Source of the DNA: Lepidodermella squamata
Lineage: Eukaryota; Animalia; Gastrotricha
Assembly: GCA_047495785.1 (NCBI GenBank)
Contig: JBLDXI010000009.1
Span: 3,100,001-3,164,000, forward strand
Length of the DNA stretch: 64,000 bases
Direction of reading: 5' to 3'
A program made the translations under genes and the position numbers. The notes under the pieces were generated by a model, which was not told the DNA's origin, searched no databases, and saw only the letters and a list, made by a program, of their open reading frames with translations. Below, in pieces: positions 1 to 16,200 of this stretch. Position 1 is the first letter of the stretch, and each line of letters starts with the position of its first letter.

Positions 1-1643
1 CCAAAGAAGACAGAACCAGGTGTTAAGAGTAATAACGACGTGGAAAATGCTAACTTTGTCGAAAACAAAGAAGACAGATTTGATGAGCGCTTGGAAGAAC
101 TGCAGAAAGTTAGTCCGAACATCGACTGGGAAGAATCTTTTCGTGCGTTGGGAGGCATGGCGGACGTCCCATCACTCGGCTCAAAGGATCTTCGGGTTTC
201 CTTCCGCAGCAAAACCTATTTCGAAAAGCTATCTGAGCTAATCGGCCAGACCAAGGCTAAACTCGGCGCCGATCGTAGCAAACGTGTGTTTCAAAACTAT
301 GCTGTCCTAACAGCAATCGATGCATTCAACGATGAAATTGCCTGCGATATATCTGCACCCTGGTACCAGCTTCAGGCCGTCGCGCGGTCTACCGCTGAGT
401 CTGAGCGCCTTGATGACGAGGCGTACTGCAAGAATCTTAAATCTGTCCATCCAGCGTGCGATGACTTGGTCCAGCTGTACCTCGACGATCACTTCGTCGC
501 CCGTCGTTTCTTGAAACGATACTTCTCGAATGAAAACGTTGACTACCTATCGAACATGACTAATCTAGTTCTGGCAGAAATTCACGACGCTTTAGATAAG
601 GTGACGTGGTTGGACGACAAGTCAAAGGCCGCCGTCAAGCTCAAGATCGAACAGATGAAATTTTCGATAGGCTTCCCGCCAGGCTTGATGAGCGAAGCTT
701 ACGATAAGAAGTATGATGCTCTTACAGCCATGGGGCCAGATTTCGTGCACAATATTAAGGCTATTAGTAAATTCGTGAGCGTTCGCAGTTTGAGACAATT
801 TAATGGTCCTGTTAATCGACTCGAGGAATTGTAATTGTTTTTTAATGCTAAAAAGCTCTGGTAAAATTACATTTTTCTTTCAGCTGGCAAGGCAGCAAGG
901 TTGTGTTTCAAAATTCGCAATACAAGCGGACCCTAAATACGTTCGGCCTACTCGCCGGCCACTACGTTGCACCTTCTTTCCGCTTCGACTTTCCTGGTGC
1001 TTGGAATTGGGGGTTCCCCAGCCAAACTATTGGACATGGTTCGATTCATACTTTCAATTCTGAGTAACTTCAATTTATTTTCAAACAGAAATCATCCATG
1101 GCTTCGATAGCAGCGGAGTCGACTTCAATGCCTACGGTGAGGCTAAGCCGATTTTGGATGGGGCGGCGCTTGCTAAGTTCAAGGAGCAGCTGAAGTGCCT
1201 CGTCGATCAGTTCGAAGTACTGCGTCCGGAACCGCCCAAGTACGGTGAAGCCACTCTGGCTGAAAATGCTGCTGACAACGCCGGGCTGAAGTTCGCATAT
1301 GCAGCCTTCAAAAAAGCTTTCGGCGATGATGGACTCAAGAAGTTCGAAGTTCCAGGCGTTCCGCTGAACAACGACCAGATATATTTCGTCAGCAATGCGC
1401 AAAGTTACTGCCTAGTAGATAGTGAATCGGGGAAGTATAAGCTGACGCACGATGAGCATGCCTACCCTCCTTGGCGGTGAGTTTTCTCTACGGAAACAGT
1501 GATCAATTCATAACCTACTTGTTTACAGAGTTAATGAAGGCATGAAGAATTTTGAGCCATTCGCTACGGCTTTTAGCTGCCCAGTTGGTTCAAAGATGAA
1601 CCCAGAAGGATGGAAACGCTGCGATATCTGGGCACCCCAGTAA
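1..1643 (+). CDS. M13 family (neprilysin/ECE-like) zinc metallopeptidase, 5'-truncated by window edge
   Basis: Exons ~1-830, 884-1038, 1089-1476, 1529-1643 with GT-AG introns. Splicing rebuilds GHEIIHGFD (HExxH), ENAADNAG (GENIADNGG-like), DEHA and the C-terminal RVN...FSCPVGSKMNP...RCDIW signature. Also has VTWLDDKSKAAVKLKIEQMKFSIGFP. Confidence 0.93.
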
Positions 1644-1776
1644 AACACTGCTATAAAGTTCTACCAACGGCAACATTCCATTGCTAACAAATTAGGACAA
1701 TATTATTAAGAAATCACTTATTTATTTCCTTTCAAGAATAGGAGCTTAGGTAATAATGGCAATTTTTTAGAATAAT

Positions 1777-3450
1777 TTAGGTTCTGGTTTCGATTTTGAT
1801 TTTCGGAAATGACATGTAGGGCGTAATAAAGGGAAGGCCCCATTTCTTCTTTTCCGTTCTCCATCGGCGGTATGTAGCTTCTTTCTCGTCGCCATGAATT
1901 TCGATATCGTATTTTGTTACAATATGCCAAATCACCAGTTTAATCACAGCGAGAGCATATCGAAAACCAAGGCACTGCCTCCTAGGATTGAGACCGAATC
2001 GGTGAAAATCGAGCTCCGACTTGCGTTCGCCCATGTGACGGGTTGGGTCAAACTTTTCAGGCTCTGGCCATATTTCAGGATCAAAATTGATCGCTTCAGC
2101 ATCCAAGCAGATGAAGGCTCCAGCAGGTAAATGATACCCACCAAGAGTTATATCATCCAGCGTCTGCTCAGCGACTGTAATCGTTAGAAACGGCTTGTGG
2201 CGGCCACATTCGCGGATAACAGCATCAAGATAAGGCAAGGACAGCAAAGAATTACAGTCCACAACCCCGGACGAATCAACATTACTCGCAGCCTGTTTCA
2301 ATTCGGCATATAACTCGTCGAGAACATGCCTCTCGTGGGCAAGGGTGATCAAGTTAGTCATCAAAACTGCATTTGTCACGTCGTTGTTGAATAGAAGGTT
2401 CTCATTCATCGATTGAATAATCATCTCTAGATCACCCGGGTTGATCTCTTCAAATGGTGGTAAACGCTCGGGGAAGAGTCGGTGAAACACCTGGGCGAAA
2501 CATCCGCCATCCGCGATAGAGACCTTGCCGCTACGTAGCATTTCATACTTCTGCTTGTTGAATGCATGCCATTGATTTTTCAGTTTGAAGCAACGTCTCT
2601 TTCTGTCAGTCGGCAGCAACAGATAAAATCGTTGGTTGCAAATGGGATTGATAGTCGAATCAGCGCTAAGTGCACTCATTTCCATAGCCATGCGATAAAC
2701 TTCATCCGTCTCGCTCTCTGCTATCAATTTACCGTACATAAGCCGTTTCAATACGTTGAACGGTAGTTTGAACAGTTCACTCCAGAAGAAGTCGAGAATA
2801 GCGCCATCTGTCAGGTAAGTTTGGCACCATTTGTCCACCTCTTCTTGCAGGATGATGAAGTTATCCTCGACTGCTTTCGGCATGAAGTCTGGCTTGAACA
2901 TGGTCCGGCATCGTTGCCAGGTTTTGCCAGCTTCGAAACCGACTGCTTGCCCCATTAATTGACTGAGCATTGGGCCCATAACTGCCAAGCCATGGTCGCG
3001 GGATACGCTTTTCGCATTGTCTCGGTACCATTCAACAGCTAGTTTACTCTGAGCTAGAACTCTGTCATTACACTTCCTGCACAAGAGCTCTAAAATAATT
3101 GCAGAAAACTCACATAATCGGGGTGTTGTAATGGTAAATGCGGTAGATGGGTCCATATTTCTGCCGCTTAGCCAAGCCTTCGTAGTTCGGCTGAGCTAAT
3201 GCACCGAACGGGAAGTGGTCGAACGTTCCATCGCCCGGTATTGACTGCAGTAATGACCCGACCTTCCGATAGCTATACCAAAGCTTGATTTTGCGGTATA
3301 GATACCACGCAGCTAGAGTCACGGAAGCTATGAACGCCCGGGAAAAAGGTTGCGAAAAATTTATCCGATGAAATGCTGCTTACTTCCGAGAAGGATGTTT
3401 TGAGCTTTCCGCATAGGTAACGCAGAATAGTTTGCGTCAAGCTGGATCAT
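1777..3450 (-). CDS. Cytochrome P450, 521 aa, with atypical (fungal GliC-like) motifs
   Basis: Exons 3450-3384, 3327-3114, 3061-1777 total 1566 nt in frame. Has an N-terminal anchor, KYGPIYRI, WQRCR (WxxxR), ECGR (ExxR), FDPTRH and the heme motif FGLNPRRQCLG. Confidence 0.92.
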
Positions 3451-3704
3451 TATCTATGTACCACTGCGAGCTCAAGAATCGTTAATTATTAAGCAACTAT
3501 AACCTCTGATTGAAGCATGAATTAACATTTTCAAAAGCAAAACAATAAGATGAAATTGTAACTTGGAAATAACTTAAAACCCCAAATGTTGAGTTCGTCA
3601 AGCAAAAGATGAAGCTGAAATTTGAAGAGCGGAATTGAAAACTAAAACGCGAATTTTGTTGACATGTTGCATCGCTGGTTTCAAAAAATGTTATTTATTG
3701 GTTT

Positions 3705-4115
3705 CAACTCGATATGGGTGATGGGACTCCAGAAGTAAAGACACTTCTGCTTTTGTGATGATAAAAGTTACCATAACCGTGACCCCGCTCCAGGCACTTC
3801 AGTGATTAGATAACAAAATGCCTCATTACTTCATGGCCTAGATAATGAGCCCAAGACATGTTGCGGTCAGACCTCAAAGATTCTGGAAAAGACTAAAAGC
3901 TCAAGTGCGCAGCTAAAGCACCGAACTCCAGGACGGAAAAGTGACGTGTTTCTGCAACCTCTTCACGCACAAACTTACAGCGGCTGTGTTGAATGCATGA
4001 AGCTGTTAAGAATCAATTCAACGCCAACTGGCGAGACACTTGACTAATCAACAAAACCTGCGACTTCTTCAACGTAACAGGGCTAACGCCACTCCTAACC
4101 TGCGCAAAGGACAGC
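3705..4115 (+). mobile_element. Possible decayed hAT-type transposase fragment
   Basis: GC-richer patch. Broken frames give LDNEPK, CFCNLFTHKLTAAV and LINKTCDFFNVTGLTPLL, in the order of the hAT DN, CxxH and following-helix motifs, interrupted by stops and frameshifts. Confidence 0.25.
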
Positions 4116-7100
4116 CAATTTCGAGATTGTTATTTTATTTATTTGAATACTTGAATATGAGTAAATATTCATAATTTCATGGGTAATTCATGGGAAAATT
4201 GAGCGTTGAAGTTGTCCTGGTTTGATTGTCATGTCTTGATCGATTAAAACAGGTGAAAATTAAGCGAGAAAAATAGATAATATTATGCTCGAAAAACACA
4301 GCCGTGCGCTAATTCGAATCAAGGTAATCCATATTATGGTATTCAGGTCACTGCTTCATTCACGGTGCCGAGGATCCACAGCTGGGGATTCGCCTATAGC
4401 AAACAAGACTAATTGCGCAATTGTTTTATATAATCGTATAATTTGATCATCAGGCCTCGTTTCCTACTACCGTGAATTTTGGTATATAAAAGCTGGGAGA
4501 CAAGATTGGGCATACAGTTCCCTAAATTCCCTACTAGAAAATGTCCCAAGCTGAATTTCTTTTCACTTTCACGCCAGATTATTAGATATATTCAATGGCA
4601 TTTTCGCCGCATTTTAATTATTTGGAACTAAAAAATTTCAATTTTACGTAAGATTTTTTCACATTTTTCGGCTTTACATCTTAGCTGATAAGAATTTTCA
4701 AGTTATACGCACTAGAAAAACAACCTGGAGGTAAACATTGAATTCCTGTGCAGCTAATTGATTACATTCGTCTGCTGTAGTGCTAACTTCCCCCATAAAA
4801 CATCATTTTTCCAGCTTCATCTCGCCTTCCTTTGAATTTCAATTTGCTTAATTATCAAGCCTCTAGTCGATAGGTCTCACCAACTCATAAGCGTGTTCTC
4901 CTACATCAGCGGTCATTTCGCGAGTGCATCATCAGTCGAGTAGACCAATATCGACAAGTTTTCTTAGGACACAGTCTTAAACTTGACCTAATTAAGGTCA
5001 TATAAGGGTGATTTTTTTCTGGTGGGACAATAATTAGGGCGTAGCTAATTTTTGTTATCTTTTTCGTTATCGATTAATAGCAATTTTTTATTTCACTTCA
5101 ATAAGCCGTAATATTTCGACTCGCCCGTGATACCCAATTGTTCGTTCTAGAACCCAAGCAGGGAGTGCTCTTTCAAAGTCAGCAACCAGCTATTTTGTAG
5201 CCAGTGTAAAAAATCGGGCGCACCCGTAAGACCTAGGTAACGCGAGCGCAATTTTATTTACTCATATCAAGGTAGCTAAAATATACCCTCGAGGAATCAT
5301 ATTATATCGTCAAGTATAAACAGACCGCTTCGTGGCTGTGCGATTATTATCTCGCGTTCGAAATCACGCGCCGCGTGCGAAATTACAACACACAGGCAAA
5401 ATAATATATCGCTGTTCGAAAACAATACCTCACAACTGCCTGGCGCTGCTCGATTTCGCGAGTCCTGGTAAAGGTAAACCATTTTTATGCCTACCTATAT
5501 TATTATAGATTATGGAAATGGGCTTATTTAGAGATCATAACAACTCAAGACATAACGATAGCTCGCGCCTGTTGTTTTCTAGATTCGCGTATAACTGATC
5601 ACCTTATCTCTCGCTGTTTTGTTCAATCATGCTCGGTGGGCGGATGAAAAACATAAATTTAGGAAAATAGTAAAAAAATTCTACTACTTCACTACTAATT
5701 TTTGTGTGTAACAATTAAATTTCGTTTTATTTTTATTCGTTTTCTCGCCACTTGTGAACAATTGAGCCGGAATTTTTTTGGCTGGTTTTTTAACGCGTTG
5801 AATCCACATTGCGCGTGACTCTATTAATCTCGCATATATATTATGATCGCCCCTCAAGAACAAAGGACGGGAAAAAAATCGCGCACCGTGAGCACGAATT
5901 AAATTAACTGTCGGAATATCGATCTCTTATTATTCGCGATGAAATTTTTTTTATAATATTTTTTAAATAAGATTTTTCGAGTTCAAATATCGTATATTAG
6001 CTTGCACCAGCCGGAAACAACCGGTCTTATATACGAGTAAGCTCGATCAAAAATCATGACGCGCTTCACAATTCTGTCTCAATAGCTTCGCCTCGTTTCC
6101 TCGTAAAAATGTCAAAATCTTCGAAAATTCTCAATGAAATAATACTTCCTTGTTTATTCGGATGTGGCAGCTATTTTTCACCCTTAATAACTTTTCAATC
6201 ACACATTTTATAAACAAAAAAATCTATTACAGGAATATAGAATTTTATAGTGATGGTAGCGGCGGTTTTAAATTCATAATTAATGCCTTGAAGATTCGGA
6301 ATTATCATGCAAAAAAAATTCTAATTGAATGTAACAACCGGTCCCTCGCGGATAGTCGGTAAATAAAAGCGCTAAAAGAGCGAGGGAGCGGACGGATGGC
6401 GAACATCGGCCTGTGCTATAATAAAAAAACAAAATTACGGAAATTAGTCCGGGTCCAATCACCTTTGTAAGTGCACAATTCGAGAAATTCCCATCTGCTA
6501 TTGAGAATAATTTTTCACGCCCATTTACACCTTTTCCGTCTTTAGGTATAATTTACCTCATGTCTTCTTCATCTAGTATTTTATTTTCACTATATCGTCA
6601 AAAACTTGTCCGTACCTGGGATTTATTGTTGACATGTCATGCGCTATTTTCAGCTCATTAGAGCACCCTAATTTACGAGACAATCAATGTTTTTTCCTTT
6701 CCTTTCCCTGCGGAGATGAAAAATCGTAAAGAAGAGGCGGACGGTCATTTATTGTTCGTGGTCACTGAAAAACAACATTATTATAATAGCCTGAAAAATA
6801 AGTTGTTTGATATGCGGCTGCTCTATTATCATTTTGATGCTCCTTATTTGTTTCCCCTTGTGCCTTATGTATAGCTATGATGGGCCGAGATTCGATATTT
6901 TATAGCAATTTTTTAATGATGATGATCTGTTTTTATAAGCGCGAGGCGATTGCGCATATCTCGTGAGGCAAGACGTGACGCAACGTGGTATAGCGCTAAT
7001 AACGCAGCTTGCGATCCGCAAGCGACAAGATCCTGTGTAATTCTATCTGGTTATATTGGGCCGTTTTTAGGCGTTTATCCGATGCCTGCTCTCAGCAGCA

Positions 7101-7663: not shown

Positions 7664-10600
7664 ATGAACCTCCTGCTAAACGGACCAAAGGGCAGTTTTG
7701 TGATCGTCGACTACGTCATCCTGGTCCTCGCCGTCATATCAAACTGCGTCGTGCTTCAGGGCATTGTTCGGGCGAAATTCAACCTAGCCGGCTATCGGCG
7801 CTTTCTCATCTCCCTGGTCATCAGCGAGCTATATGTCTGCGCCGTTAATTTGGCCCTATTCATGTTCGAAATCCTTACGTGGTACATGCCGAACAATTTC
7901 GGCAACCACTGCGAGTCTCACGTTCTACGGTCGTTTCAGCTGGTTGGATTTTTCGGTAATTTTTCATGATTTCAAAAAAAAAGAAGCCAAAGCAGGAAAA
8001 TTCAAATAATTCCTTATTAAATTTTCCAGCAAATCTGCTCAATCTATTCGGCATGACAGTCGATCACTTCATAGGAATTGTACGTTATAAACGGCCTGAA
8101 TTGAGTCTTAATTTTAATTATTTTATTTTCCAGGTTTACCCGCTCAAATACCGATCGGTAGTTTTCCCAGATTTTTCGAGGATTTTTCTTCATTTGATTT
8201 TGTTTTAGTGGATGAATGCTTCTGCAGCTCGAACAGCCGTTTGTGCCATCTGGATTATTTCCTTACTATTAGGATTCGCCGACATGCCAGTCGCTACGGT
8301 CAAGTACTTTTCGCAAAAATCGACATCAACCGGCAAACCAGCTGTTTGCTCCGGAAACGTAATCTCCGACATTGTCGACATTCTGGAGAGCAGTGATTTT
8401 CTGTCGCAAAATCAAAACTTGCTATTCAGCCAGGGCGAAAGCGAGCGGCCGCGAGGTTCGAGCGCGTTGGGCGCCAACTTTTTCATGCGATACCCGAATG
8501 GGTCTGATGTTTTCAATACGAGTGACTACAACTACTACAACAACCCGGCGATGAGCGACCCGGCGCTGTATCCCTTTCTATTTCTTGCCCAGTCTGAATC
8601 TTACTACGATGAGAAATTACTCAGGTATGAAGTTTGCAGTAATTCACTAATTAAATGCAATAATTAAATTGTGACATTTTTTATTATTTTTTCCCAAATT
8701 TTTTAATTTTTCTGATGTCGGAATTTTATAATTTTTTATTAAATATCTTTATGTTATGCATTTTTTGGGCTATCTAAACCTGCCTAAACCTGCTCAGCCG
8801 AAATTTTATGTATCGCTGACGTTTAATCGTATAAATAAGGCGAGGACAAATACGACGGGACAAACATGAAAGTACACATAAGACGATCAATTCAATTCTA
8901 TACCAGGAGAAATAAGACGAGGACAATTAAGACAAATGAAAAGAATGATATTTAGGGTTACGCTTAGGGTTAGGGTTGCAGTTACGTTTAGTTACGATTA
9001 CGGTTAGTCTTATATGTCCCTCCTTAATTGTTCTCGTCTTAATTATTGTCCCGTTATAAAATTACAAATTAATTATCCTAATCGCCCTGGTCTTATTAGT
9101 ACCCTTTCCATCGCTGATTCTTTTCATTTCAATTTAATTTAATTTTTAAATGAATCTGAATTTTAGAGGAATAGAAGGAATTGATGCCATGTAATAATTA
9201 ATAAGGCGGAGCATTTTATCGGATTTCTTATTAATCGATAAATTCGGAAAAATGAATTTTTTGTGTGACTAATTTCAGACTGAAATCCCCATTAATTTTT
9301 CAATGATTTCTTCCTTTTTTTAGAGATACTCGAAGTGTCACGAAATCGAAAAGCAAGTCAAAAGCTCTCAAGCAGCCTCAGGCAGCAGCCATAACTTTCA
9401 GCTCATCTTCCTCTAGCCCTCGAAGCCAAGACATAACGTCGAAACCATCTCGGCTAACTGTTAATCATTCAAAACTGATTTTCTCTAACTTCAAAAACAA
9501 TATTCATATATTCATAGTTATCCTACGCGACGACTTTCAAGGCGACTACAACCACCCCACCAACTACGACATTTTTGTCGCAAATAACAACGACTTCGCT
9601 GTCGAGGCGCATTATTCAATCGCCCGAGAATGAAGTCGCCCTATGCGAGGCCCTGATCAAAGCTCAGAATAAAATGGACGACCACGGCTGGTGTTCACAA
9701 TATGGCCAAGATCCGTGGCTTGAAGTGTGCATGTACGTTAATTTTTTAGAAATTTTTCGATTTGATTTGATTTATTTTATTTTCTTTTAGAATGTCTCTA
9801 ACAATAGTATGCTTCATTTTCTTCTCTTTCTGCTACGGCAAAATATTCCGAAAGGTACAATTTGCCCCGTCTCGATGACGATTTCACCCGATTAATGATG
9901 ATTAATTAATCGATTTTTTTCGCAAAGGTGTTCGTTGAAGCGGAATTCAAGCGTCGAAAAACGAAAAAAATGGTCGTCACAACGTGTCTGCTGCTGAGTA
10001 CATTCGCAATTTGGTACGGATGATTATTGCACCTTCTGTCTAGGTCACATTTTTAGGACTGTCAGATAGTCCTTAAGTGTTATACCCTGGACCCCTGGAC
10101 CCACGCTCGGTATCCAGGTGTAAAAATTAAATAATTTGATTTGAAAATTCAATAAAATTCTGCTAAATTGAGAGAATGAGAAAAAAATGAGAATTTAAAT
10201 TTATTAAAATATTTTTTTTAACAGTTACCTGCCATTTATGCTCTACGAGTTTTTCATGATGTGGTACGATGACGCAGCTCAAGTTCAAAGTTCTACAACG
10301 TAAGTCCTAAAAATCAATAAAATTTGAGAAATTCTCTAGGAAATGATTGATTAAATTTGAATTTTCCTTTTACTAACTGCTTGATCATCGCATTTTATTC
10401 CATACTTCTCAGCCCCGATGAATCGGAATTTGAAGTCATAAGCTATGAAATGTAATGCTTACCGTAGTGTAAAAACCTTTAATTTTATTTAGTTTATTTT
10501 TAATTTTATCAATCAAGTAGAAGATGAATGAGTCTATTATCTGAACATAAACTCGTTCACATCACAATAATTCTGTTTCCGTTGAATCCTTTACTTTTAG

Positions 10601-11360
10601 CCTTAGAAAAATTCAACATTTTTCGGATTGAAATTAATTCTGATTTTTTCTATTTTATTTAATAAAGGTTTCTTCTCATTCACAACGGTAAAAGACTTCT
10701 TCAGTTGAAAATGTGGGACTCTTCAAATTTTTAATATTTCAGTTTTCAACTCGCTATTGCTTTCCTATCCTCTTTTCGATCCAATTATCTTCGTCGCGCG
10801 ATCTCCTCCTGTCATGAGGTAATCCTTATTCAAGGTGTCCCAAAGAAAAATAAGTTTAATTTCGATCCAGAAATGTTCTCGACCAATTCAGATGGTTGCT
10901 GCCCTGCTGCCCGGGGCCGATTCGATCCCGATTAAAGCAGACTCTATCAGAAACCAAGTATTCCTACGGTAGTGAAATGTCGAATCGAAGATCGACCCGC
11001 GTTTCAATTTCATACCCGAATACGAATCGAGAACGCGGCAGCAGTGTAACAGCTCACGAAAGTACGGCGACGAACACTGGCGATGAAAATCGGCCGGCGA
11101 AAAACGGCTCAGCCGCGTGTGAAGTGCCTCTGCTGCCGTTTGTCGCGGCGCCAAACGGCGGGCCCGCCGCAAATATTCACCATCTTAACATCGCCTCGCT
11201 CCACTTGCGAGACCCAAAGTGCTGCTGTAATGGAATTAACGGTATAGTCATTCCCCCGGCATCAGGTGACACCAAGGCGGTGAGAGTTAACGGAAATGGA
11301 GCAGCTGCGGCTCGAAAACTATACTTATTCGGCGCCGAGGCGGAAGATTACTATATTTAG
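7664..11360 (+). CDS. Class A GPCR paralog 1 (large ECL2)
   Basis: Exons ~7664-7955, 8030-8079, 8134-8157, 8209-8624, 9324-9459, 9518-9732, 9791-9853, 9928-10012, 10224-10299, 10668-10687, 10743-10818, 10871-11360. Motifs SLVISEL, MTVDHFIGIVYP, W4.50, WC, FCYGKIF, CYLP, DPIIF. Confidence 0.88.
8834..9104. mobile_element. Foldback/MITE-like element with degenerate TTAGGG core
   Basis: Left arm ATAAGACGAGGACAATTAAG pairs with right arm CTTAATTGTTCTCGTCTTAA around TTAGGGTTACGCTTAGGGTTAGGG at ~8952-9006. Confidence 0.6.
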
Positions 11361-13264
11361 TGCCTTATATCGAACTTAAAAGAAGACAACATGATGATAA
11401 TCTCCTTGCCATTTTATTTTTCATTTCTGTATGTGTTCCGATGGAATTAAATAATTCTCGCAAAAAAGGCCGACCGATAAATAAAAAATGAGGACGGAAT
11501 TGTGTATGTTTATTTAGGGTAACTACAAACCCAGCCGTAATTTTAATCGAATTATTATGTTCGGTTATATAAAAATGATATATCACGATATTTTCCGCTG
11601 TTTACTACTGGCGCGTATAATATTAGCGGCCGGAAAAATGTAGGTAGTAATTTGATTTGCGGCTAAAAAGCAAAAAAAATAGCTCCGCATGACCATTTAT
11701 TATTGCGATGAAAGGACGTAGTGGTTGATTTAATTTTGGGATAATGTTATATTTTAACATCTTATTTCCGCTGTTGATACTGCCTCTCTTTCCGGGTAGT
11801 TCGGATCACCGCACTCGTAACATGTTTCTCTTGATGGTCGGTCTTATGAAAAAATAATGACATCTAAAAGGGTCTGCGGGGATTTTCGATATGCAGTAAG
11901 TCTGACGAAATTTTTAATCCTCGACGCTTCAATTTCGATAACGCGTCATGGGCCACCTATGAACCTGTTTATTGACGGCTTCTCACTTTGCCTTGTAATC
12001 CTTTAAACCTCTCTAAATGATCGTTAAAATTAACAATCTCCTTGCGGATTATCCTGAAATCAGTCGCGAGTAGACGTATTGATCTCATCTATTTTTAGTA
12101 AAATTCTTGTTTTTTATCCCTTGAATATTTTTCTAAAATTTTATCAGAGCACAGGAAAATGTCGGACGCGCCTCCGTCTAGGCCACTTGGCGAAACCCTC
12201 AAAATAATTCCGAAAAATCGTCGAAATTAATATCCTGAACTTGCGGCGAAAATGTTAGGCTGCGTAGGGTGCGGATGAATCTACGCTCATTTTAGCCCTA
12301 TAAATGGCCTCCTGTGTTTAATTAATTTACGCATTAGACGTCAAAACAGTTCATCGTGCTTACAGAGGAAAATATCCGCTACGTAATCGCGACGTCGCTA
12401 AGTTCAAAATGTCTCAAATTTCGATAAAGACTATAAGTTACATGTTACAAGTTACATAAACGGGTTCCAAGTATTTCATTCAATTTTCAGAATAGCTGAA
12501 TTTTTTTTGGAAATAATACGCGGTAGGGGTTCATATATGTCTCTCGCTCTCTCGCTTTTGTTTTTGTTTTTGTTAAAAGATGGGACCAATACGGCTACTT
12601 TATATTATTAGGCGAGAATTTAGGACAATTACTTATTCATAAGCCATTACCAGCAATATTTACTACACATAGTTGTTGTTTGCCGATATGACCTGCTATG
12701 GACATTTCGAACTCTCCCACAGTATATATAAGCAAAAGCCCACGCCGCAACCCCGAAATTCGATACGCACGCATTTTAAGGCCGCAGTTTTTATTATCGG
12801 CTCAAATAATACACACAAAAATCGCCGCACGCTTTTTGCTGCGCAATAGCCAAATTTTACCATTATTTTTAGGATTCTTATAATTCCCTAATTTCTAAAA
12901 ATAAATTAGATTTTTCATTAATATTAATGTGCGGGATTTTTTTCGTGAAAAATTAAGAATAATATTAGATTTCCTAACTTTGAAAAGTATTTTTTTTTAG
13001 GAAATATGCTTGCTGTAAATTTATAATTGGTTCCGCTGAAGCTCATCATTAGTTTCGCTCAAAGAATTTCGTTTATTAGGACTCGTTATTAAATCCTAGA
13101 ATTTCGTCTCACTTAGTAGGTCTAGCAAGATTTAATCTTTCAATTATACCTTAGAATTTTAATCAACATTAAGTTATTTACGCAGATAAATATGACACCC
13201 CGTTGCGGCGTCGACTTGGGTCGCACTTGAGTGTTTTTCGCCCGTCAAACCTGGACCTGTACTA

Positions 13265-16200
13265 ATGGAGAATTTCGCCTCAGTGCCTCATGAACTTGGA
13301 AGCAACTTTGACTATGATAACCAGACCGCCGTAGCTCCATCTGTCGTGGAGGAGGAACAGCAGCAGCAGCAGATTCAAGACTTCTTACAGGGCCCGAAAG
13401 GGCCGTTTATTCTCTACGATTACTTTGTTTCTCTACTCGCTGTTTTCGTCAATATCATCGTTCTGCAGTGCATAATTCGAGCGAGGATAAACTTGACGGG
13501 TTACAAGTATTTTCTGATCAGCCTCGGCCTGTCCGACTTGTACCTGTGCATAGTCAATTTGTGCGTGTTCGCCACGCAGGCGGTTGTTCAGCATTACAGC
13601 GGCGAGACAAGCAAATGCTGGACCCAGGTGTCGCGTTCGCTGCAAATCGTCGGCTTCATGGCTAACTTACTCAACATTTGCGGCATGAGTGTCGACCATT
13701 TCATCGGAATTGTGAGTCATTTTTCGATAAGGCAATAAGTACATACCCGATATGAGAGTAAAAGAACATTATAATTTCCAATAATATACTTGCTAGCCAA
13801 ATGACCAAATGACCAAATAAGCAAAGCTTTGGACTTGATAGCTTTGACTTAATTTGGTCAAATAAAATAAATTTTAATTACCAAAAAACAATTTAATTCA
13901 CCTTTTTAAGAAAGTGAGAAATTCATGAAATTATGATTTTCTGAACTTCAGAAGCCGACAAACTGCTAAATTTTGAAAATGATAAGCCTAAAATATTGCC
14001 GGGTTTTTTTCACCTTGGAACCCGGTACCAATTCAAAGTGCCCAACTAGCAAATATTCTAACGAAATCATGAGAAGTACCGAATTTGAGGCACCTTCCTT
14101 TTTGGGATGAATCTGACTGAAATTCCTGGCTTTTTACCTTATGATCCTAATTCGATGGCTACCCGATCAAGAAACTTGAAAATTTATTAATATTATTTCT
14201 TATCATGTTGAGAATTGGGGAAAACTTCTTCCATTTCTTCCAAACCAACAATTTGAATTCAATTTACCCGACACTGGTTTTTCCAAGAATTAGAAATTTA
14301 CCTTTTTGCCAATCGCACTAATTATTCTAAAAAGTTTGGATCGGTTTGAATTTCGTCAGTTTGCTTCGATTCCCCTCCACAAATACTCCAGGCAAAGAAT
14401 AGTAATTTGTGGAGAATAACCCCATAATAATCAAGTTATCAAGGGACTTCATCACTTCTAGTTGACTTCATCGGATTTCACGTCTAGTTCAAAGGTCATT
14501 AGAGCTCGGAAACCTAATTGTTGGAAAATCGATTCTCTGTAAAGGCTTTGACCTTACCCAGCCGATGGATGGCATTGCCCACCTACCTTATTTGTTTCAA
14601 TATGTTCTAATATCGCTAATACTTGCCCATCCCTAATAGTAGCCCAGGGTTGAGGTGTCAAGCCGGTCCTAAACGTAAATAATGAACGATTCGCCAACAA
14701 TTAATTTTCGAATTTCGCTCAAAATTTTGACGTTAAAATTTTAGTAGCAAGGGCTGTTATAGGAAAAATCCTGCTTTCAACCAGCGAGACAAATTTGACA
14801 CCGAAGGTCATTTTGGATAATGTTAAGTCGCATTTTACTTCCGGATAGTTGAGTCATGTTCCGGATATAAAGACACTGATCGGATGGAAATTTCTCACTC
14901 GGGAAATTAGGTAAAATTTAGGGACAGCAATTTTAGTATAGGAATTCGACAACTAATAATGTTAAGGTGGGTTTTTTATTGTTAGCTAAACAATTTTAGA
15001 TATTTTAATTATCTTCTGAATTAAGTGCGAGGTCGCCGTAAAACGTAATTCAAAATTTCCCGAAATTTTCAGAATTATTCTGAATATTGCGATCTAATTA
15101 TTTTCAGATTTACCCGCTAAAATACCACCAAATAATGACCAAGCGATGCCTCCGCGGCATAATCGTGCTAATATGGACAACAGCCCTGCTCATCGGAACA
15201 GCCGACGTACCCGTCACCTCCTACATGTACTACTCGTCCATGCACGACCGGCCGGCTAGAATCGAAGGCTCGACGACGCCTGATATGATGAGCAACAAAG
15301 CGGCTAACATGAACTGTCCGACGAGCAGCGAGTCGCGGGAGCAAATGATTTCACCCGCGAATCAGCCGCATTCATCCATGGAAGATACAAACACAGACTC
15401 GACGTTGTGGATGCAGGTGATGAACGATTTTGACCTGGATTTCACAGACAACACCCTGCTTAGCGCACTCGAGCGTGACTTGCAGGAGTCGAAGAAAACA
15501 ACCGTTGAGACAACAACCATGTACGAGGTTACTACTGAACTAACAACTAGAAGCAGACGGTCGACAAATCGGAAACTGCTTAGATCGGTTGGAATTTCGA
15601 CTACTATAGACTCGCCGTTGTCGGATTTCAAAACAACAACTTTTGCGACTGTGCGAAAATTTGGGCCGAAAAAACCGAAGAAACCGGCGATTGCCAAGTC
15701 GGCCAAGTCTAGTCTGCTAAACAGAACAGCTCCGGACCTGAAATTAGTTGTGAAATCTAGGAAACCAGTTAGCTCAACAGAACTGAAAGCTCATCATGAC
15801 ACGTAAGTTGATCGAATTTTTAAAATTTAAAATCCTTTTTTGAAATTCAAAAATATTATAGAAAATCGAGAAAAAATCGATTTGTTTCCGATTTATCGAT
15901 TTTGAAAAAATTAATTTGTATTATTTTTATTGAAATTCTGTATTATTTAATTTAATTTTAATTTATTTTAATTTTCAAAAATCACCACTATTTTTTTTCT
16001 TTTAGATCACCGACTGCACCAGCGCCAATTGCTTCTCCTCCTACGGACAATCGTTACAGCTGTTTTGTGAATCAATTTTTGAAGGCTCTTGAGACAATTA
16101 GTGTTGAGCAGAGTTCGCAGAGTTGGTGCAATTTTTACAACACGAGAAACTGGCTCGAATGGGCTGTTATGACGTCGACCGTCATATGCTTCGTCTTCCT

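What the first reader, a model, noticed from the sequence alone, without database searches (positions are those of the whole stretch)
1777..3450. Fungal GliC-like cytochrome P450 in an animal genome: candidate horizontal transfer
Seen: the I-helix reads NENLLFNNDVT instead of the animal (A/G)GxD/ET(T/S), and the heme loop reads FHRFGLNPRRQCLG with G to N and one extra residue. Other segments are SQLMGQAVGFEAGKTWQR, ECGRHKP and GYHLPAGAFICLDAEAIN. A single 1285-nt exon covers the catalytic domain and both introns are at the 5' end. Recalled from memory, not searched: GliC/SirC-type P450s of fungal epipolythiodioxopiperazine clusters have EMLFANLDVT, LLGxCVGLxxGxxW and FWRFGFGPRQC. Inference: a domesticated microbial-type P450 with host-sized introns, perhaps acting on diketopiperazines or other cyclic peptides.
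Basis: partly seen in the sequence, partly recalled or inferred. Interest (0 to 1): 0.7.

Follow-up and report, generated by a model that had tools for sequence, protein, structure and literature searches.

The report
Orphan diketopiperazine-type P450 in a gastrotrich
This small invertebrate has a working cytochrome P450 gene of the family that oxidises cyclic dipeptides (fungal GliC is the studied member); its closest relatives are animal genes in rotifers and sea anemones that are fused to or sit beside a cyclic-dipeptide synthase, so it looks like an old animal gene that lost its partner, not a recent import from a fungus.

Summary
A three-exon gene on the minus strand (1777-3450) encodes a 521-residue P450 with the odd I-helix NENLLFNNDVT and a heme loop carrying G-to-N and one extra residue.

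A protein named GliC and other fungal P450s with EMLFANLDVT / FWRFGFGPRQC fall in one well-supported family with this gene (100/99).

A fungal donor is not supported. Joining it to the fungal clade is rejected (AU p 0.011).

Its sisters are P450-cyclodipeptide synthase (CDPS) fusion proteins of bdelloid rotifers (100/97). A sea-anemone member lies head-to-head with a CDPS gene. One clade of all animal members is not rejected (p 0.54).

The anemone and rotifer genes share three intron positions and phases. The window gene shares one of them.

Other members are fused to CDPS or lie next to NRPS genes, so a cyclic-dipeptide substrate is a strong family-level inference.

I found neither CDPS nor an NRPS condensation domain in this genome.

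The gene has a 94% identical copy kept under purifying selection (dN/dS 0.09) and appears transcribed.

Best reading: an old, patchily kept animal P450 lineage, now an orphan that probably oxidises cyclic dipeptides made elsewhere.

The parts
3384..3450 (-). Exon 1: ATG at 3450 and the hydrophobic N-terminal stretch (ILLG..., continued in exon 2) typical of a membrane-anchored P450. An alternative start is the Met at codon 13.
   Evidence: Read from the sequence. The C25 copy keeps the same start region and GTAAGC donor. The start codon itself is not confirmed by RNA.
3328..3383 (-). Intron 1 (56 nt, GT..AG, phase 1).
   Evidence: Sequence. It has no counterpart at the aligned place in the rotifer or anemone genes.
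3114..3327 (-). Exon 2 (214 nt): the rest of the membrane anchor, a basic stretch (RKIKLW..YRK) and the start of the catalytic domain, up to ...YHYNTPI.
   Evidence: ORF 3110-3322 and the sequence. It has no Pfam hit on its own.
3062..3113 (-). Intron 2 (52 nt, GT..AG, phase 2). It splits the codon just before VLAQSKLAVEWY. This is the same aligned codon and phase as an intron of the Actinia, Rotaria and Adineta family members.
1777..3061 (-). Exon 3 (1285 nt, stop at 1779-1777): nearly the whole P450 catalytic domain.
   Evidence: PF00067 E 5.7e-34. AlphaFold2 model with mean pLDDT 90.1 and pTM 0.91. dN/dS 0.09 against the C25 copy.
2374..2406 (-). I-helix motif NENLLFNNDVT. It carries the family signature E-x-x-L-x-N-x-D-V-T in place of (A/G)Gx(D/E)T(T/S). 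The acid is kept, the usual Thr is Val, and a Thr follows.
   Evidence: (alignment to CYP11A1).
2200..2211 (-). ExxR motif of the K helix (ECGR). E and R are invariant in the family alignment.
1966..2007 (-). Heme-binding loop FHRFGLNPRRQCLG. The Cys ligand is present. There is one extra residue before the Cys, as also in the C24 copy, the bdelloid rotifers, Gefionella and P0051. G is changed to N, as in the bdelloids.
281..4125 (.). Block duplicated on contig C25 (84% nt identity). It holds the 3' exons of the neighbouring M13 peptidase gene and the whole P450 gene in the same tail-to-tail order. Homology stops at 4125.
1..1642 (+). Neighbour, given as context only: the 3' part of an M13 (neprilysin-like) metallopeptidase gene with short spliceosomal introns. 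Its stop lies 135 bp from the P450 stop.
   Evidence: PF05649 and PF01431. A GT..AG joint 1037->1088 is seen in run X2.

Best explanation
The gene encodes an intact, membrane-anchored, eukaryote-type cytochrome P450 monooxygenase of 521 residues. It belongs to a patchy, eukaryote-wide P450 family.

The family is marked by the I-helix E-x-x-L-x-N-x-D-V-T. Its members are repeatedly tied to enzymes that make dipeptides. Fungal GliC, which bis-hydroxylates the diketopiperazine core in gliotoxin synthesis, is the characterised member.

Within the family the gene belongs to an animal branch. Its sisters are the P450-cyclodipeptide-synthase fusion proteins of bdelloid rotifers. A sea-anemone member sits head-to-head with a CDPS gene. 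The animal genes share intron positions.

The most likely history is an old animal P450 + CDPS pair, kept in a few phyla. In this animal (said by earlier notes of the scan to be the gastrotrich Lepidodermella squamata) only the P450 survives. It was duplicated and is kept by selection.

Inferred mechanism: electrons from NADPH-P450 reductase, a Cys-ligated heme, and hydroxylation or another oxidation of a cyclic dipeptide or similar small cyclic peptide. Since no CDPS or NRPS was found here, that substrate would come from food bacteria, the environment or non-enzymatic cyclisation.

Shown: the gene, fold, family, sister groups, shared intron, selection and missing partner. Inferred: the substrate class, the redox partner and the vertical history.
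For: Gene and fold:
- PF00067 E 5.7e-34.
- AlphaFold2 pLDDT 90.1. Foldseek top matches are CYP17A1, CYP51 and CYP3A4, TM about 0.75.
- The family profile best matches eukaryotic E-class P450s.

Relatives:
- In the exhaustive search of 1.84 billion proteins, the best hit is Rotaria socialis P0015 (37% identity, E 2.3e-75, full length).
- P0015 and Adineta vaga P0202 are 795-aa P450+CDPS proteins (PF16715 E 3e-21 and 8e-21; TIGR04539 97 bits against a cut-off of 45).
- In Rotaria one exon runs without a stop from the I-helix into the CDPS part.

Tree (68 rows, LG+C20+F+G4):
- the family: 100/99
- window gene + two paralogs + bdelloids: 100/97
- the fungal GliC clade lies in the other half of the family

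AU tests:
- animals as one clade: lnL +1.1, p 0.54
- window clade with the fungal clade: lnL -37.2, p 0.011

Introns:
- Actinia: 30/ph0, 87/ph2, 292/ph0, 392/ph0.
- Rotaria and Adineta: 29/ph0, 86/ph2, 292/ph0.
- Window intron 2 matches the phase-2 one.

Links to dipeptide synthesis:
- The Actinia P450 lies about 700 bp from a CDPS gene, divergently oriented.
- Environmental fusions P0206 and P0110.
- P0032 lies next to an A-T-C-A-T NRPS and P0016 next to an NRPS A-T.
- GliC = DKP bis-hydroxylase (PMC7891397).

Maintained and used:
- The C9 and C25 copies are 94% identical in protein, with dN/dS 0.09, dS 0.34 and no indel. Flanks are about 75% identical with many gaps.
- Run X2 covers 400-3600 only, the span of the two genes and not the DNA beyond, and skips an intron of the neighbour.

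Not a chimera: two contigs carry the same peptidase-P450 order.
Against: - No CDPS was found in this genome (PF16715 best E 0.75; the Rotaria CDPS part and a CDPS profile found nothing). No NRPS condensation domain was found either. The family's usual substrate source is therefore missing and the substrate may have changed.
- The AU test only fails to reject an animal clade. In the free tree an unnamed intronless environmental pair (P0019 + the fusion P0206) is the weakly supported sister (86/60) of the gastrotrich-rotifer clade.
- Only one of the window gene's two introns is shared.
- Most family members come from unnamed metagenome or read-archive assemblies, so the family's range in animals is unknown.
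- Animal CYP clans 2, 4, 7, 19, 20, 26, 46, 51 and 74 were not put in the tree as named rows. Their exclusion rests on the ranking of the exhaustive search.
- Splicing of the P450's own introns was not seen in the reads shown.
- No enzyme of the non-fungal half of the family has been assayed, as far as I could find.
Confidence: 0.6

Rival explanations
1. One reading: a GliC/SirC-type P450 moved from a fungus into this animal, then gained host-sized introns.
For: - The gene is in the same family as fungal GliC-type P450s, which are full-length hits at 22-27% identity, E 1e-17 to 1e-27.
- The I-helix signature is shared.
- Language-model look-alikes are mostly Ascomycota clusters.
- Earlier notes describe several foreign-looking genes in this genome (not checked by me).
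Against: - The fungal clade (12 rows, 100/99) lies in the other half of the family.
- A tree joining it to the window clade is rejected (p-AU 0.011).
- Closer relatives exist in rotifers (37%), a sea anemone, protists and giant-virus-like DNA.
- The C-terminal GLPF.TPY motif and the longer heme loop are shared with non-fungal members only.
- One intron is shared with other animals.
Confidence: 0.04
2. Transfer from a protist or giant virus: a P450 (perhaps already fused to a CDPS) entered an ancestor of gastrotrichs and rotifers, or each lineage separately. Cnidarians got theirs separately, and the intron matches come from insertion at favoured sites.
For: - The family is very patchy: Balamuthia, Gefionella, Ancoracysta, chytrids, and giant-virus MAGs (a fragment lies beside the viral PolB gene in L035).
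- In the free tree the nearest outgroup of the gastrotrich-rotifer clade is an intronless environmental pair that includes a P450-CDPS fusion of the same domain order (86/60).
- The Adineta gene lies near a chromosome end (13.22 of 13.89 Mb). From my own knowledge, foreign genes of bdelloids are concentrated there.
- Bdelloids are known for much gene transfer (PMC11258130, abstract).
Against: - Three of three bdelloid introns match anemone introns in place and phase, and one matches the window gene. That is hard to get by chance.
- An all-animal clade fits the data slightly better than the free tree.
- The support for the environmental sister is weak.
Confidence: 0.22
3. Same origin as in the best explanation, but the enzyme no longer acts on cyclic dipeptides. 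After losing its CDPS partner it was taken over for another job, such as detoxifying food or environmental chemicals, or making a lipid or steroid-like signal.
For: - No CDPS or NRPS was found in the genome.
- The branch leading to the C9/C25 pair is long (0.70 changes per site).
- The G-to-N change in the heme loop and the duplications fit a change of use.
- The genome has at least 98 CYP matches, so P450-based chemical defence is prominent here.
Against: - The family-specific I-helix, ExxR and C-terminal motifs are all kept.
- The heme-loop peculiarities are shared with the rotifer enzymes that are still fused to a CDPS.
- Bacteria, which gastrotrichs eat, commonly make cyclic dipeptides (general knowledge; CDPS distribution in PMC4159871).
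Confidence: 0.3
4. Artefact: a contaminant contig or an assembly chimera joins a microbial P450 to animal DNA.
For: No single read or contig shown spans the whole 6 kb.
Against: - The gene lies 3.1 Mb inside a 5.65-Mb contig, 135 bp from an intron-bearing M13 peptidase gene.
- The same gene pair in the same order occurs on a second contig at 84% nt identity.
- It has two GT..AG introns of the local size.
- Its GC content equals that of the neighbouring animal gene.
- Contigs of the DNA run X1 cover all 30 bins of 1-6000.
Confidence: 0.01

Closest known systems
Fungal GliC (and SirC-type) P450s of epipolythiodioxopiperazine gene clusters
   Same: - Same P450 family in the tree (100/99).
- Same I-helix signature (N-x-D-V-T in place of G-x-D-T-T) and full-length alignment.
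- GliC oxidises a diketopiperazine made by a two-module NRPS (PMC7891397).
- Relatives of the window gene sit next to CDPS or NRPS genes.
   Different: - Only 22-27% identical, and in the other half of the family. A sister relation is rejected (p-AU 0.011).
- The fungal enzymes have FWRFGFGPRQC without the extra residue and lack the C-terminal GLPF.TPY motif.
- They sit in biosynthetic clusters. The window gene sits between a peptidase gene and receptor genes, with no dipeptide-forming enzyme found in the genome.
P450-cyclodipeptide synthase fusion proteins of bdelloid rotifers (Rotaria socialis CAM4986353.1 and relatives; Adineta vaga I4U23_031446). They are unnamed in the databases, and I found no paper on them.
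   Same: - Closest relatives (35-37% identity, full length; clade 100/97).
- Same one-residue-longer heme loop with N for G.
- Same phase-2 intron.
- Same C-terminal GLPF.TPY motif.
   Different: - The rotifer proteins continue into a 280-residue NYH-type CDPS domain. The window gene stops after the P450 domain, 135 bp from the next gene.
- The rotifer genes have an I-helix intron that the window gene lacks.
Sea-anemone P450 next to a CDPS gene (Actinia tenebrosa 'cytochrome P450 3A6-like', P0204). The Nematostella CDPS is the characterised animal CDPS (Seguin et al. 2011, cited in PMC5816076 and PMC4159871).
   Same: - Same half of the family.
- An all-animal clade is not rejected.
- Shares the phase-2 intron with the window gene and three introns with the rotifer genes.
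   Different: - About 26% identical to the window protein.
- Ordinary-length heme loop (FGMGPRKCLG).
- P450 and CDPS are separate, divergently oriented genes.
Bacterial CDPS-associated P450s (CYP121 of M. tuberculosis, CYP134A1/CypX of B. subtilis; NCBIfam TIGR04538)
   Same: The same logic: a P450 that tailors the product of a CDPS (PMC2922099). CDPS-P450 fusions also exist in bacteria (PMC5816076).
   Different: - Not the same P450 lineage. TIGR04538 scores 22.9 bits against a cut-off of 500.
- No bacterial B-class P450 is among the best PDB matches.
- The described bacterial fusion has the opposite domain order, with CDPS first.
Ordinary animal CYPs (clan 3 and the mitochondrial clan as sampled)
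   Same: - Same fold and eukaryote-type architecture with an N-terminal anchor.
- The best solved-structure matches by sequence are CYP24A1, CYP3A4/5 and CYP11A1.
   Different: - It falls outside them in the tree (split 100/99).
- The next-best CYPs of the same genome match only the C-terminal 160 residues, at E 1e-20. They have an ordinary heme loop, and most match AGxETT.

Membership tests
Cytochrome P450 superfamily (PF00067) | Profile match above the curated cut-off over the whole catalytic domain | tested here: met
   118 bits against a cut-off of 22.8, profile positions 49-448 of 462.
Cytochrome P450 superfamily (PF00067) | Cys heme ligand in the F-x-x-G-x-R-x-C-x-G loop | tested here: met
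   FHRFGLNPRRQCLG at 2007-1966. The Cys and the flanking F, G, R and G are present, with one extra residue and N for the second G.
Cytochrome P450 superfamily (PF00067) | ExxR of the K helix | tested here: met
   ECGR at 2211-2200. E and R are invariant in the 44-row alignment.
Cytochrome P450 superfamily (PF00067) | I-helix (A/G)Gx(D/E)T(T/S) oxygen-activation motif | tested here: not met
   It reads LFNNDVT. The acid is kept and Val replaces the first Thr. The whole family departs from the motif in this way, so this does not argue against an active P450.
GliC-like / dipeptide-linked P450 family (the 44-row clade defined here) | Groups with GliC-type P450s, apart from other CYPs, in a maximum-likelihood tree | tested here: met
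   Family clade 100/99. Other CYPs, including 7 of this genome, fall on the other side.
GliC-like / dipeptide-linked P450 family (the 44-row clade defined here) | I-helix signature E-[ILMF]-x-[LFY]-x-N-x-[DE]-[VIL]-[TSM] | tested here: met
   ENLLFNNDVT. E and N are invariant in the family.
GliC-like / dipeptide-linked P450 family (the 44-row clade defined here) | Gene fused to, or next to, a dipeptide-forming enzyme (CDPS or two-module NRPS) | tested here: not met
   The neighbours are an M13 peptidase and receptor genes. No CDPS or condensation domain was found in the genome. The feature is met in relatives.
GliC-like / dipeptide-linked P450 family (the 44-row clade defined here) | Oxidises a 2,5-diketopiperazine | not testable with these tools
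   Shown only for fungal GliC (PMC7891397). Inferred for the rest from fusions and gene neighbourhood.
Fungal GliC orthologue group (ETP cluster P450) | Falls inside or next to the fungal GliC clade | tested here: not met
   It lies in the other half of the family. The constrained tree is rejected (lnL -37.2, p-AU 0.011).
   The best hit and sister group are bdelloid rotifers. A sea-anemone member exists. An animal clade is not rejected.
   Intron 2 has the same aligned codon and phase as in Actinia, Rotaria and Adineta. Intron 1 is not shared.
Animal CYP clan 3 / mitochondrial clan | Nests within the clan with support | tested here: not met
   It is separated by a 100/99 split from CYP3A-like, CYP9-like, CYP11A1 and this genome's clan-3-like genes. 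Other clans were not sampled as named rows.

The most novel reading that the evidence does not exclude
The last common ancestor of cnidarians and bilaterians already had a two-gene pathway for modified cyclic dipeptides: a tRNA-dependent cyclodipeptide synthase plus this dedicated P450. The pair survives as neighbours in sea anemones and as a single fused protein in bdelloid rotifers. In the gastrotrich it survives as an orphan, duplicated P450 that now works on cyclic dipeptides made by other organisms, for example bacterial signals or toxins in its food. This P450 lineage would then be an overlooked old animal CYP branch tied to non-ribosomal peptide chemistry.
Probability: 0.35. Interest if true: 0.75.

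Novelty: new variant of a known kind. Interest (0 to 1): 0.6.

Why it matters
Animals are usually thought to make few non-ribosomal peptides. The one characterised animal cyclodipeptide synthase (Nematostella) has been treated as an isolated curiosity, with no known tailoring enzyme in the papers I could search.

This gene led to a P450 lineage that is physically tied to a CDPS in two animal phyla: fused in bdelloid rotifers and adjacent in a sea anemone. It shares introns across three phyla. That makes an old animal pathway for modified cyclic dipeptides directly testable by expressing the rotifer fusion or the anemone pair and identifying the product.

For the gastrotrich, it gives a concrete substrate class to test for an otherwise unplaceable P450. 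It also removes one candidate from the list of supposed fungal transfers in this genome.

Tried and rejected
- **First word-index search.** The search with exon 3 gave only weak hits (24% to a locust CYP). It cannot see proteins longer than 747 aa, so it missed the 795-aa rotifer fusions. The exhaustive search found them.
- **Word search with the 13-row alignment.** It was swamped by candidates and returned mostly CYP3-like proteins, so it was uninformative.
- **NCBIfam.** Only far-below-cut-off matches to bacterial P450 models. The bacterial 'CDPS-associated P450' model does not fit.
- **Fold search.** Generic eukaryotic P450s only, and no solved member of the family.
- **Partner search in this genome.** I searched with the Pfam CDPS model (also at E up to 10), the Rotaria CDPS part, a profile of six CDPS tails and the NRPS condensation domain. 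Nothing was found. One 15-bit stretch on C14 at E 0.75 was taken as noise.
- **Reads.** The runs are stored as short contigs. No piece spans the whole locus and no joint over the P450's own introns was among those shown. Organism names are coded, so I could not confirm the species.
- **The C24 paralog.** I looked 1.4 kb upstream for its missing N-terminal third and found nothing.
- **Literature.** Searches for a rotifer CDPS or a eukaryotic P450-CDPS fusion gave nothing relevant. The search for papers on giant-virus P450s was not useful.
- **Joined protein not searched.** Under the operators' rule I searched the gene exon by exon, by reference (exon 3 as window:1780-3060:-, exon 2 as window:3113-3322:-).
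Full report
**1. What is there**

The minus strand of 1777-3450 carries a three-exon gene.
- Exon 3 (3061-1777, 1285 nt with the stop) translates without interruption into 427 residues. These match the Pfam P450 model over nearly its whole length (E 5.7e-34).
- Upstream, GT..AG introns of 52 nt (3113-3062, phase 2) and 56 nt (3383-3328, phase 1) join it to exon 2 (3327-3114) and exon 1 (3450-3384).
- The result is a 521-codon reading frame. Its start is a hydrophobic stretch followed by basic residues, as in membrane-anchored P450s.
- An AlphaFold2 model of exon 3 is confident (pLDDT 90.1, pTM 0.91). It resembles solved eukaryotic P450s (CYP17A1, CYP51, CYP3A4; TM about 0.75).
- The joined protein was not searched.

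**2. It is part of the animal genome and is in use**

- The window lies 3.1 Mb inside a 5.65-Mb contig of a 121-Mb assembly.
- The P450 stop is 135 bp from the stop of an M13 peptidase gene with short spliceosomal introns. The rest of the window is an array of receptor genes.
- A second contig (C25) carries the same peptidase-P450 pair in the same order. Homology runs over window 281-4125 at 84% nucleotide identity and then stops, so this is a segmental duplication and not a second haplotype.
- The two P450 copies are 94% identical in protein. They have no indel in 1281 nt, with dS 0.34, dN 0.030 and dN/dS 0.09. The flanks are about 75% identical with many gaps. Both copies are therefore under purifying selection.
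- A third copy on C24 (42% identical, 354-residue open frame) lacks the N-terminal third. Contig C121 is an identical duplicate of that locus.
- Run X2, probably RNA, covers 400-3600 only, the span of the two genes, and none of 3600-6000. It skips a GT..AG intron of the peptidase gene. So the P450 or its near-copy is very probably transcribed, but I did not see its own splice joints.
- Earlier notes of this scan name the animal as probably the gastrotrich Lepidodermella squamata. I did not test that.

**3. What family it is**

- The word-index search found nothing close, partly because of its length window.
- The exhaustive search of 1.84 billion representatives gave 9 proteins at E up to 1e-30. 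The best is a 795-residue protein of the bdelloid rotifer Rotaria socialis (37% identity, E 2.3e-75, aligned end to end).
- All full-length hits share an I-helix of the form E-I-L-L-x-N-x-D-V-T and mostly F-H-R-F-G-L-G-P-R-K-C-L-G.
The named ones are from Penicillium, Halenospora, Ophidiomyces and Taiwanofungus. The recalled likeness is therefore real.
- Further named members come from:
  - a chytrid (Gaertneriomyces)
  - the amoeba Balamuthia
  - the protists Gefionella and Ancoracysta
  - a 371-kb contig with giant-virus-like gene content
  - giant-virus genome bins, where a fragment lies beside the viral DNA polymerase gene
- The 13 other CYP genes of this genome that I extracted have an ordinary heme loop, and 10 match the strict (A/G)Gx(D/E)T(T/S) pattern.

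**4. Where it sits in the family**

I built a careful maximum-likelihood tree of 68 rows (LG+C20+F+G4).
- The family (44 rows) is separated from CYP3-like, CYP11A1, locust, bacterial and plant CYP782 sequences and from seven other CYPs of this genome by a split with support 100/99.
- Inside the family, the three copies of this genome and the two bdelloid proteins form a clade (100/97).
- That clade lies in a 28-row half (99/92) together with a sea-anemone clade, the giant-virus-like clade and environmental sequences.
- The 12 fungal rows (100/99) lie in the other half.
- Forcing the window clade to join the fungal clade costs 37.2 log-likelihood units and is rejected (p-AU 0.011).
- Forcing all eight animal rows (gastrotrich, rotifer, anemone) into one clade gives a slightly better likelihood than the free search found (p-AU 0.54).

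**5. Introns**

Exact spliced mapping gave the following.
- Actinia: introns after residues 30 (phase 0), 87 (phase 2), 292 (phase 0) and 392 (phase 0).
- Rotaria and Adineta: introns after residues 29 (phase 0), 86 (phase 2) and 292 (phase 0).
- All three rotifer introns coincide with anemone introns in aligned place and phase.
- The window gene's intron 2 is the phase-2 one. In all four genes it splits the codon just before the conserved (V/I/L)-L-A-x-x-x-(L/A)-x-x-x-(F/W)-Y stretch.
- The window gene lacks the I-helix intron, and its intron 1 has no counterpart.
- Shared introns across Cnidaria, Rotifera and this animal argue for an old intron-bearing animal gene, and against the idea that the introns were gained after a recent arrival.

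**6. What the family does**

- The Rotaria and Adineta proteins are P450s fused at the C-terminus to a cyclodipeptide synthase (PF16715 E 3e-21 and 8e-21; TIGR04539 97 bits against a cut-off of 45).
- In the Rotaria DNA one exon runs from the I-helix through the heme loop into the CDPS part without a stop.
- The CDPS part keeps the Ser-containing G-x-S-x-G-N motif and Y-H of the NYH subfamily.
- In Actinia the P450 lies head-to-head, about 700 bp from a CDPS gene. That CDPS is 29% identical to the rotifer CDPS part.
- Two environmental members are also P450-CDPS fusions (P0206, P0110).
- Two others lie beside NRPS genes, one of them a two-module A-T-C-A-T enzyme.
- Fungal GliC bis-hydroxylates the diketopiperazine made by the two-module NRPS GliP (PMC7891397).
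- The link between this P450 family and enzymes that make dipeptides thus recurs across the tree. The inference that members oxidise cyclic dipeptides is strong at the family level.
- It is unrelated to the bacterial CDPS-associated P450s.
- Papers I could search list eukaryotic CDPSs in Ascomycota, Annelida, Ciliophora and Cnidaria, and describe CDPS-first fusions to P450 in bacteria (PMC4159871, PMC5816076). I found nothing on rotifer CDPSs or on a P450 partner of an animal CDPS.

**7. The twist in this genome**

Neither a CDPS nor an NRPS condensation domain was found in the 121-Mb assembly. These searches work exon by exon, and a blank is not proof of absence.

The P450 is therefore an orphan that has nevertheless been duplicated and conserved. 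The most economical reading is that it still oxidises cyclic dipeptides or similar small cyclic peptides that the animal does not make with these enzymes. Candidates are products of the bacteria it eats, or spontaneously cyclised peptides. A change of substrate is a serious alternative.

**8. Verdict**

- 'GliC-like' and 'diketopiperazines' are supported.
- 'Fungal origin' and 'horizontal transfer into this animal' are not supported.
- The main remaining doubt on origin is an old transfer from a protist or giant virus into an ancestor of gastrotrichs and rotifers. The data do not exclude it.

Noticed in passing
L024 4166-6747 (Rotaria socialis CAJNYU010003207.1); L030 10001-12571 (Adineta vaga CP075497.1): Bdelloid rotifers encode a 795-residue natural fusion of this P450 type (N-terminal) with an NYH-type cyclodipeptide synthase (C-terminal). 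The two species' proteins are 86% identical and both genes have three short introns. I found no paper describing it.
   Followed up: partly
L030 (Adineta vaga chromosome CP075497.1, 13.22 of 13.89 Mb): The Adineta fusion gene lies near a chromosome end. Its neighbours are short-chain dehydrogenase, alpha/beta-hydrolase, arginase-family and NNMT/PNMT-type methyltransferase genes, which may form a small biosynthetic cluster.
   Followed up: no
L026 8369-9312 (minus) and 10001-13509 (plus), Actinia tenebrosa WAHB01000801.1: In a sea anemone, a CDPS gene and a P450 of this family are divergent neighbours about 700 bp apart, and both contain introns. This suggests that the known cnidarian CDPS has a dedicated tailoring P450.
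   Followed up: partly
L031 5093-9856 (minus) and 10001-11410 (plus); L032 1009-2415 and 2534-4354: Two unnamed environmental members of the family lie next to NRPS genes. One NRPS is a complete two-module A-T-C-A-T enzyme 145 bp away on a gene-dense contig rich in ankyrin and F-box genes, of giant-virus or protist type.
   Followed up: partly
L035 8025-8450 (IMG/VR GVMAG-M-3300020192-26): A giant-virus genome bin carries only the C-terminal 141 residues of a P450 of this family, directly after its family-B DNA polymerase gene and near a collagen-repeat gene. It is probably a decayed copy.
   Followed up: partly
G000:C24:4158323-4159273 (L003 1480-2544, minus); G000:C121 (L004): A third copy, 42% identical, has an open 354-residue frame and a G (not N) in the heme loop but no N-terminal third within 1.4 kb. 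It lies between an ABC-transporter gene end and an unrelated gene. Contig C121 repeats this locus with 100% identity, so it is probably a redundant contig.
   Followed up: partly
G000:C24:3484101-3498797 (L005-L009, L012, L013): A tandem array of at least seven intronless, full-length (513-522 aa) CYP genes that group with CYP3-like proteins. The genome has at least 98 CYP-like matches in all.
   Followed up: partly
window 8200-64000, plus strand: A long same-strand array of related multi-exon receptor-like genes with large, low-complexity extracellular loops. This is the orphan GPCR array already noted nearby by the scan.
   Followed up: no
window 1-1642, plus strand: The M13 peptidase neighbour has its HExxH zinc motif split by an intron (…IGH | EIIHGFD). 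It is duplicated together with the P450 on contig C25.
   Followed up: no
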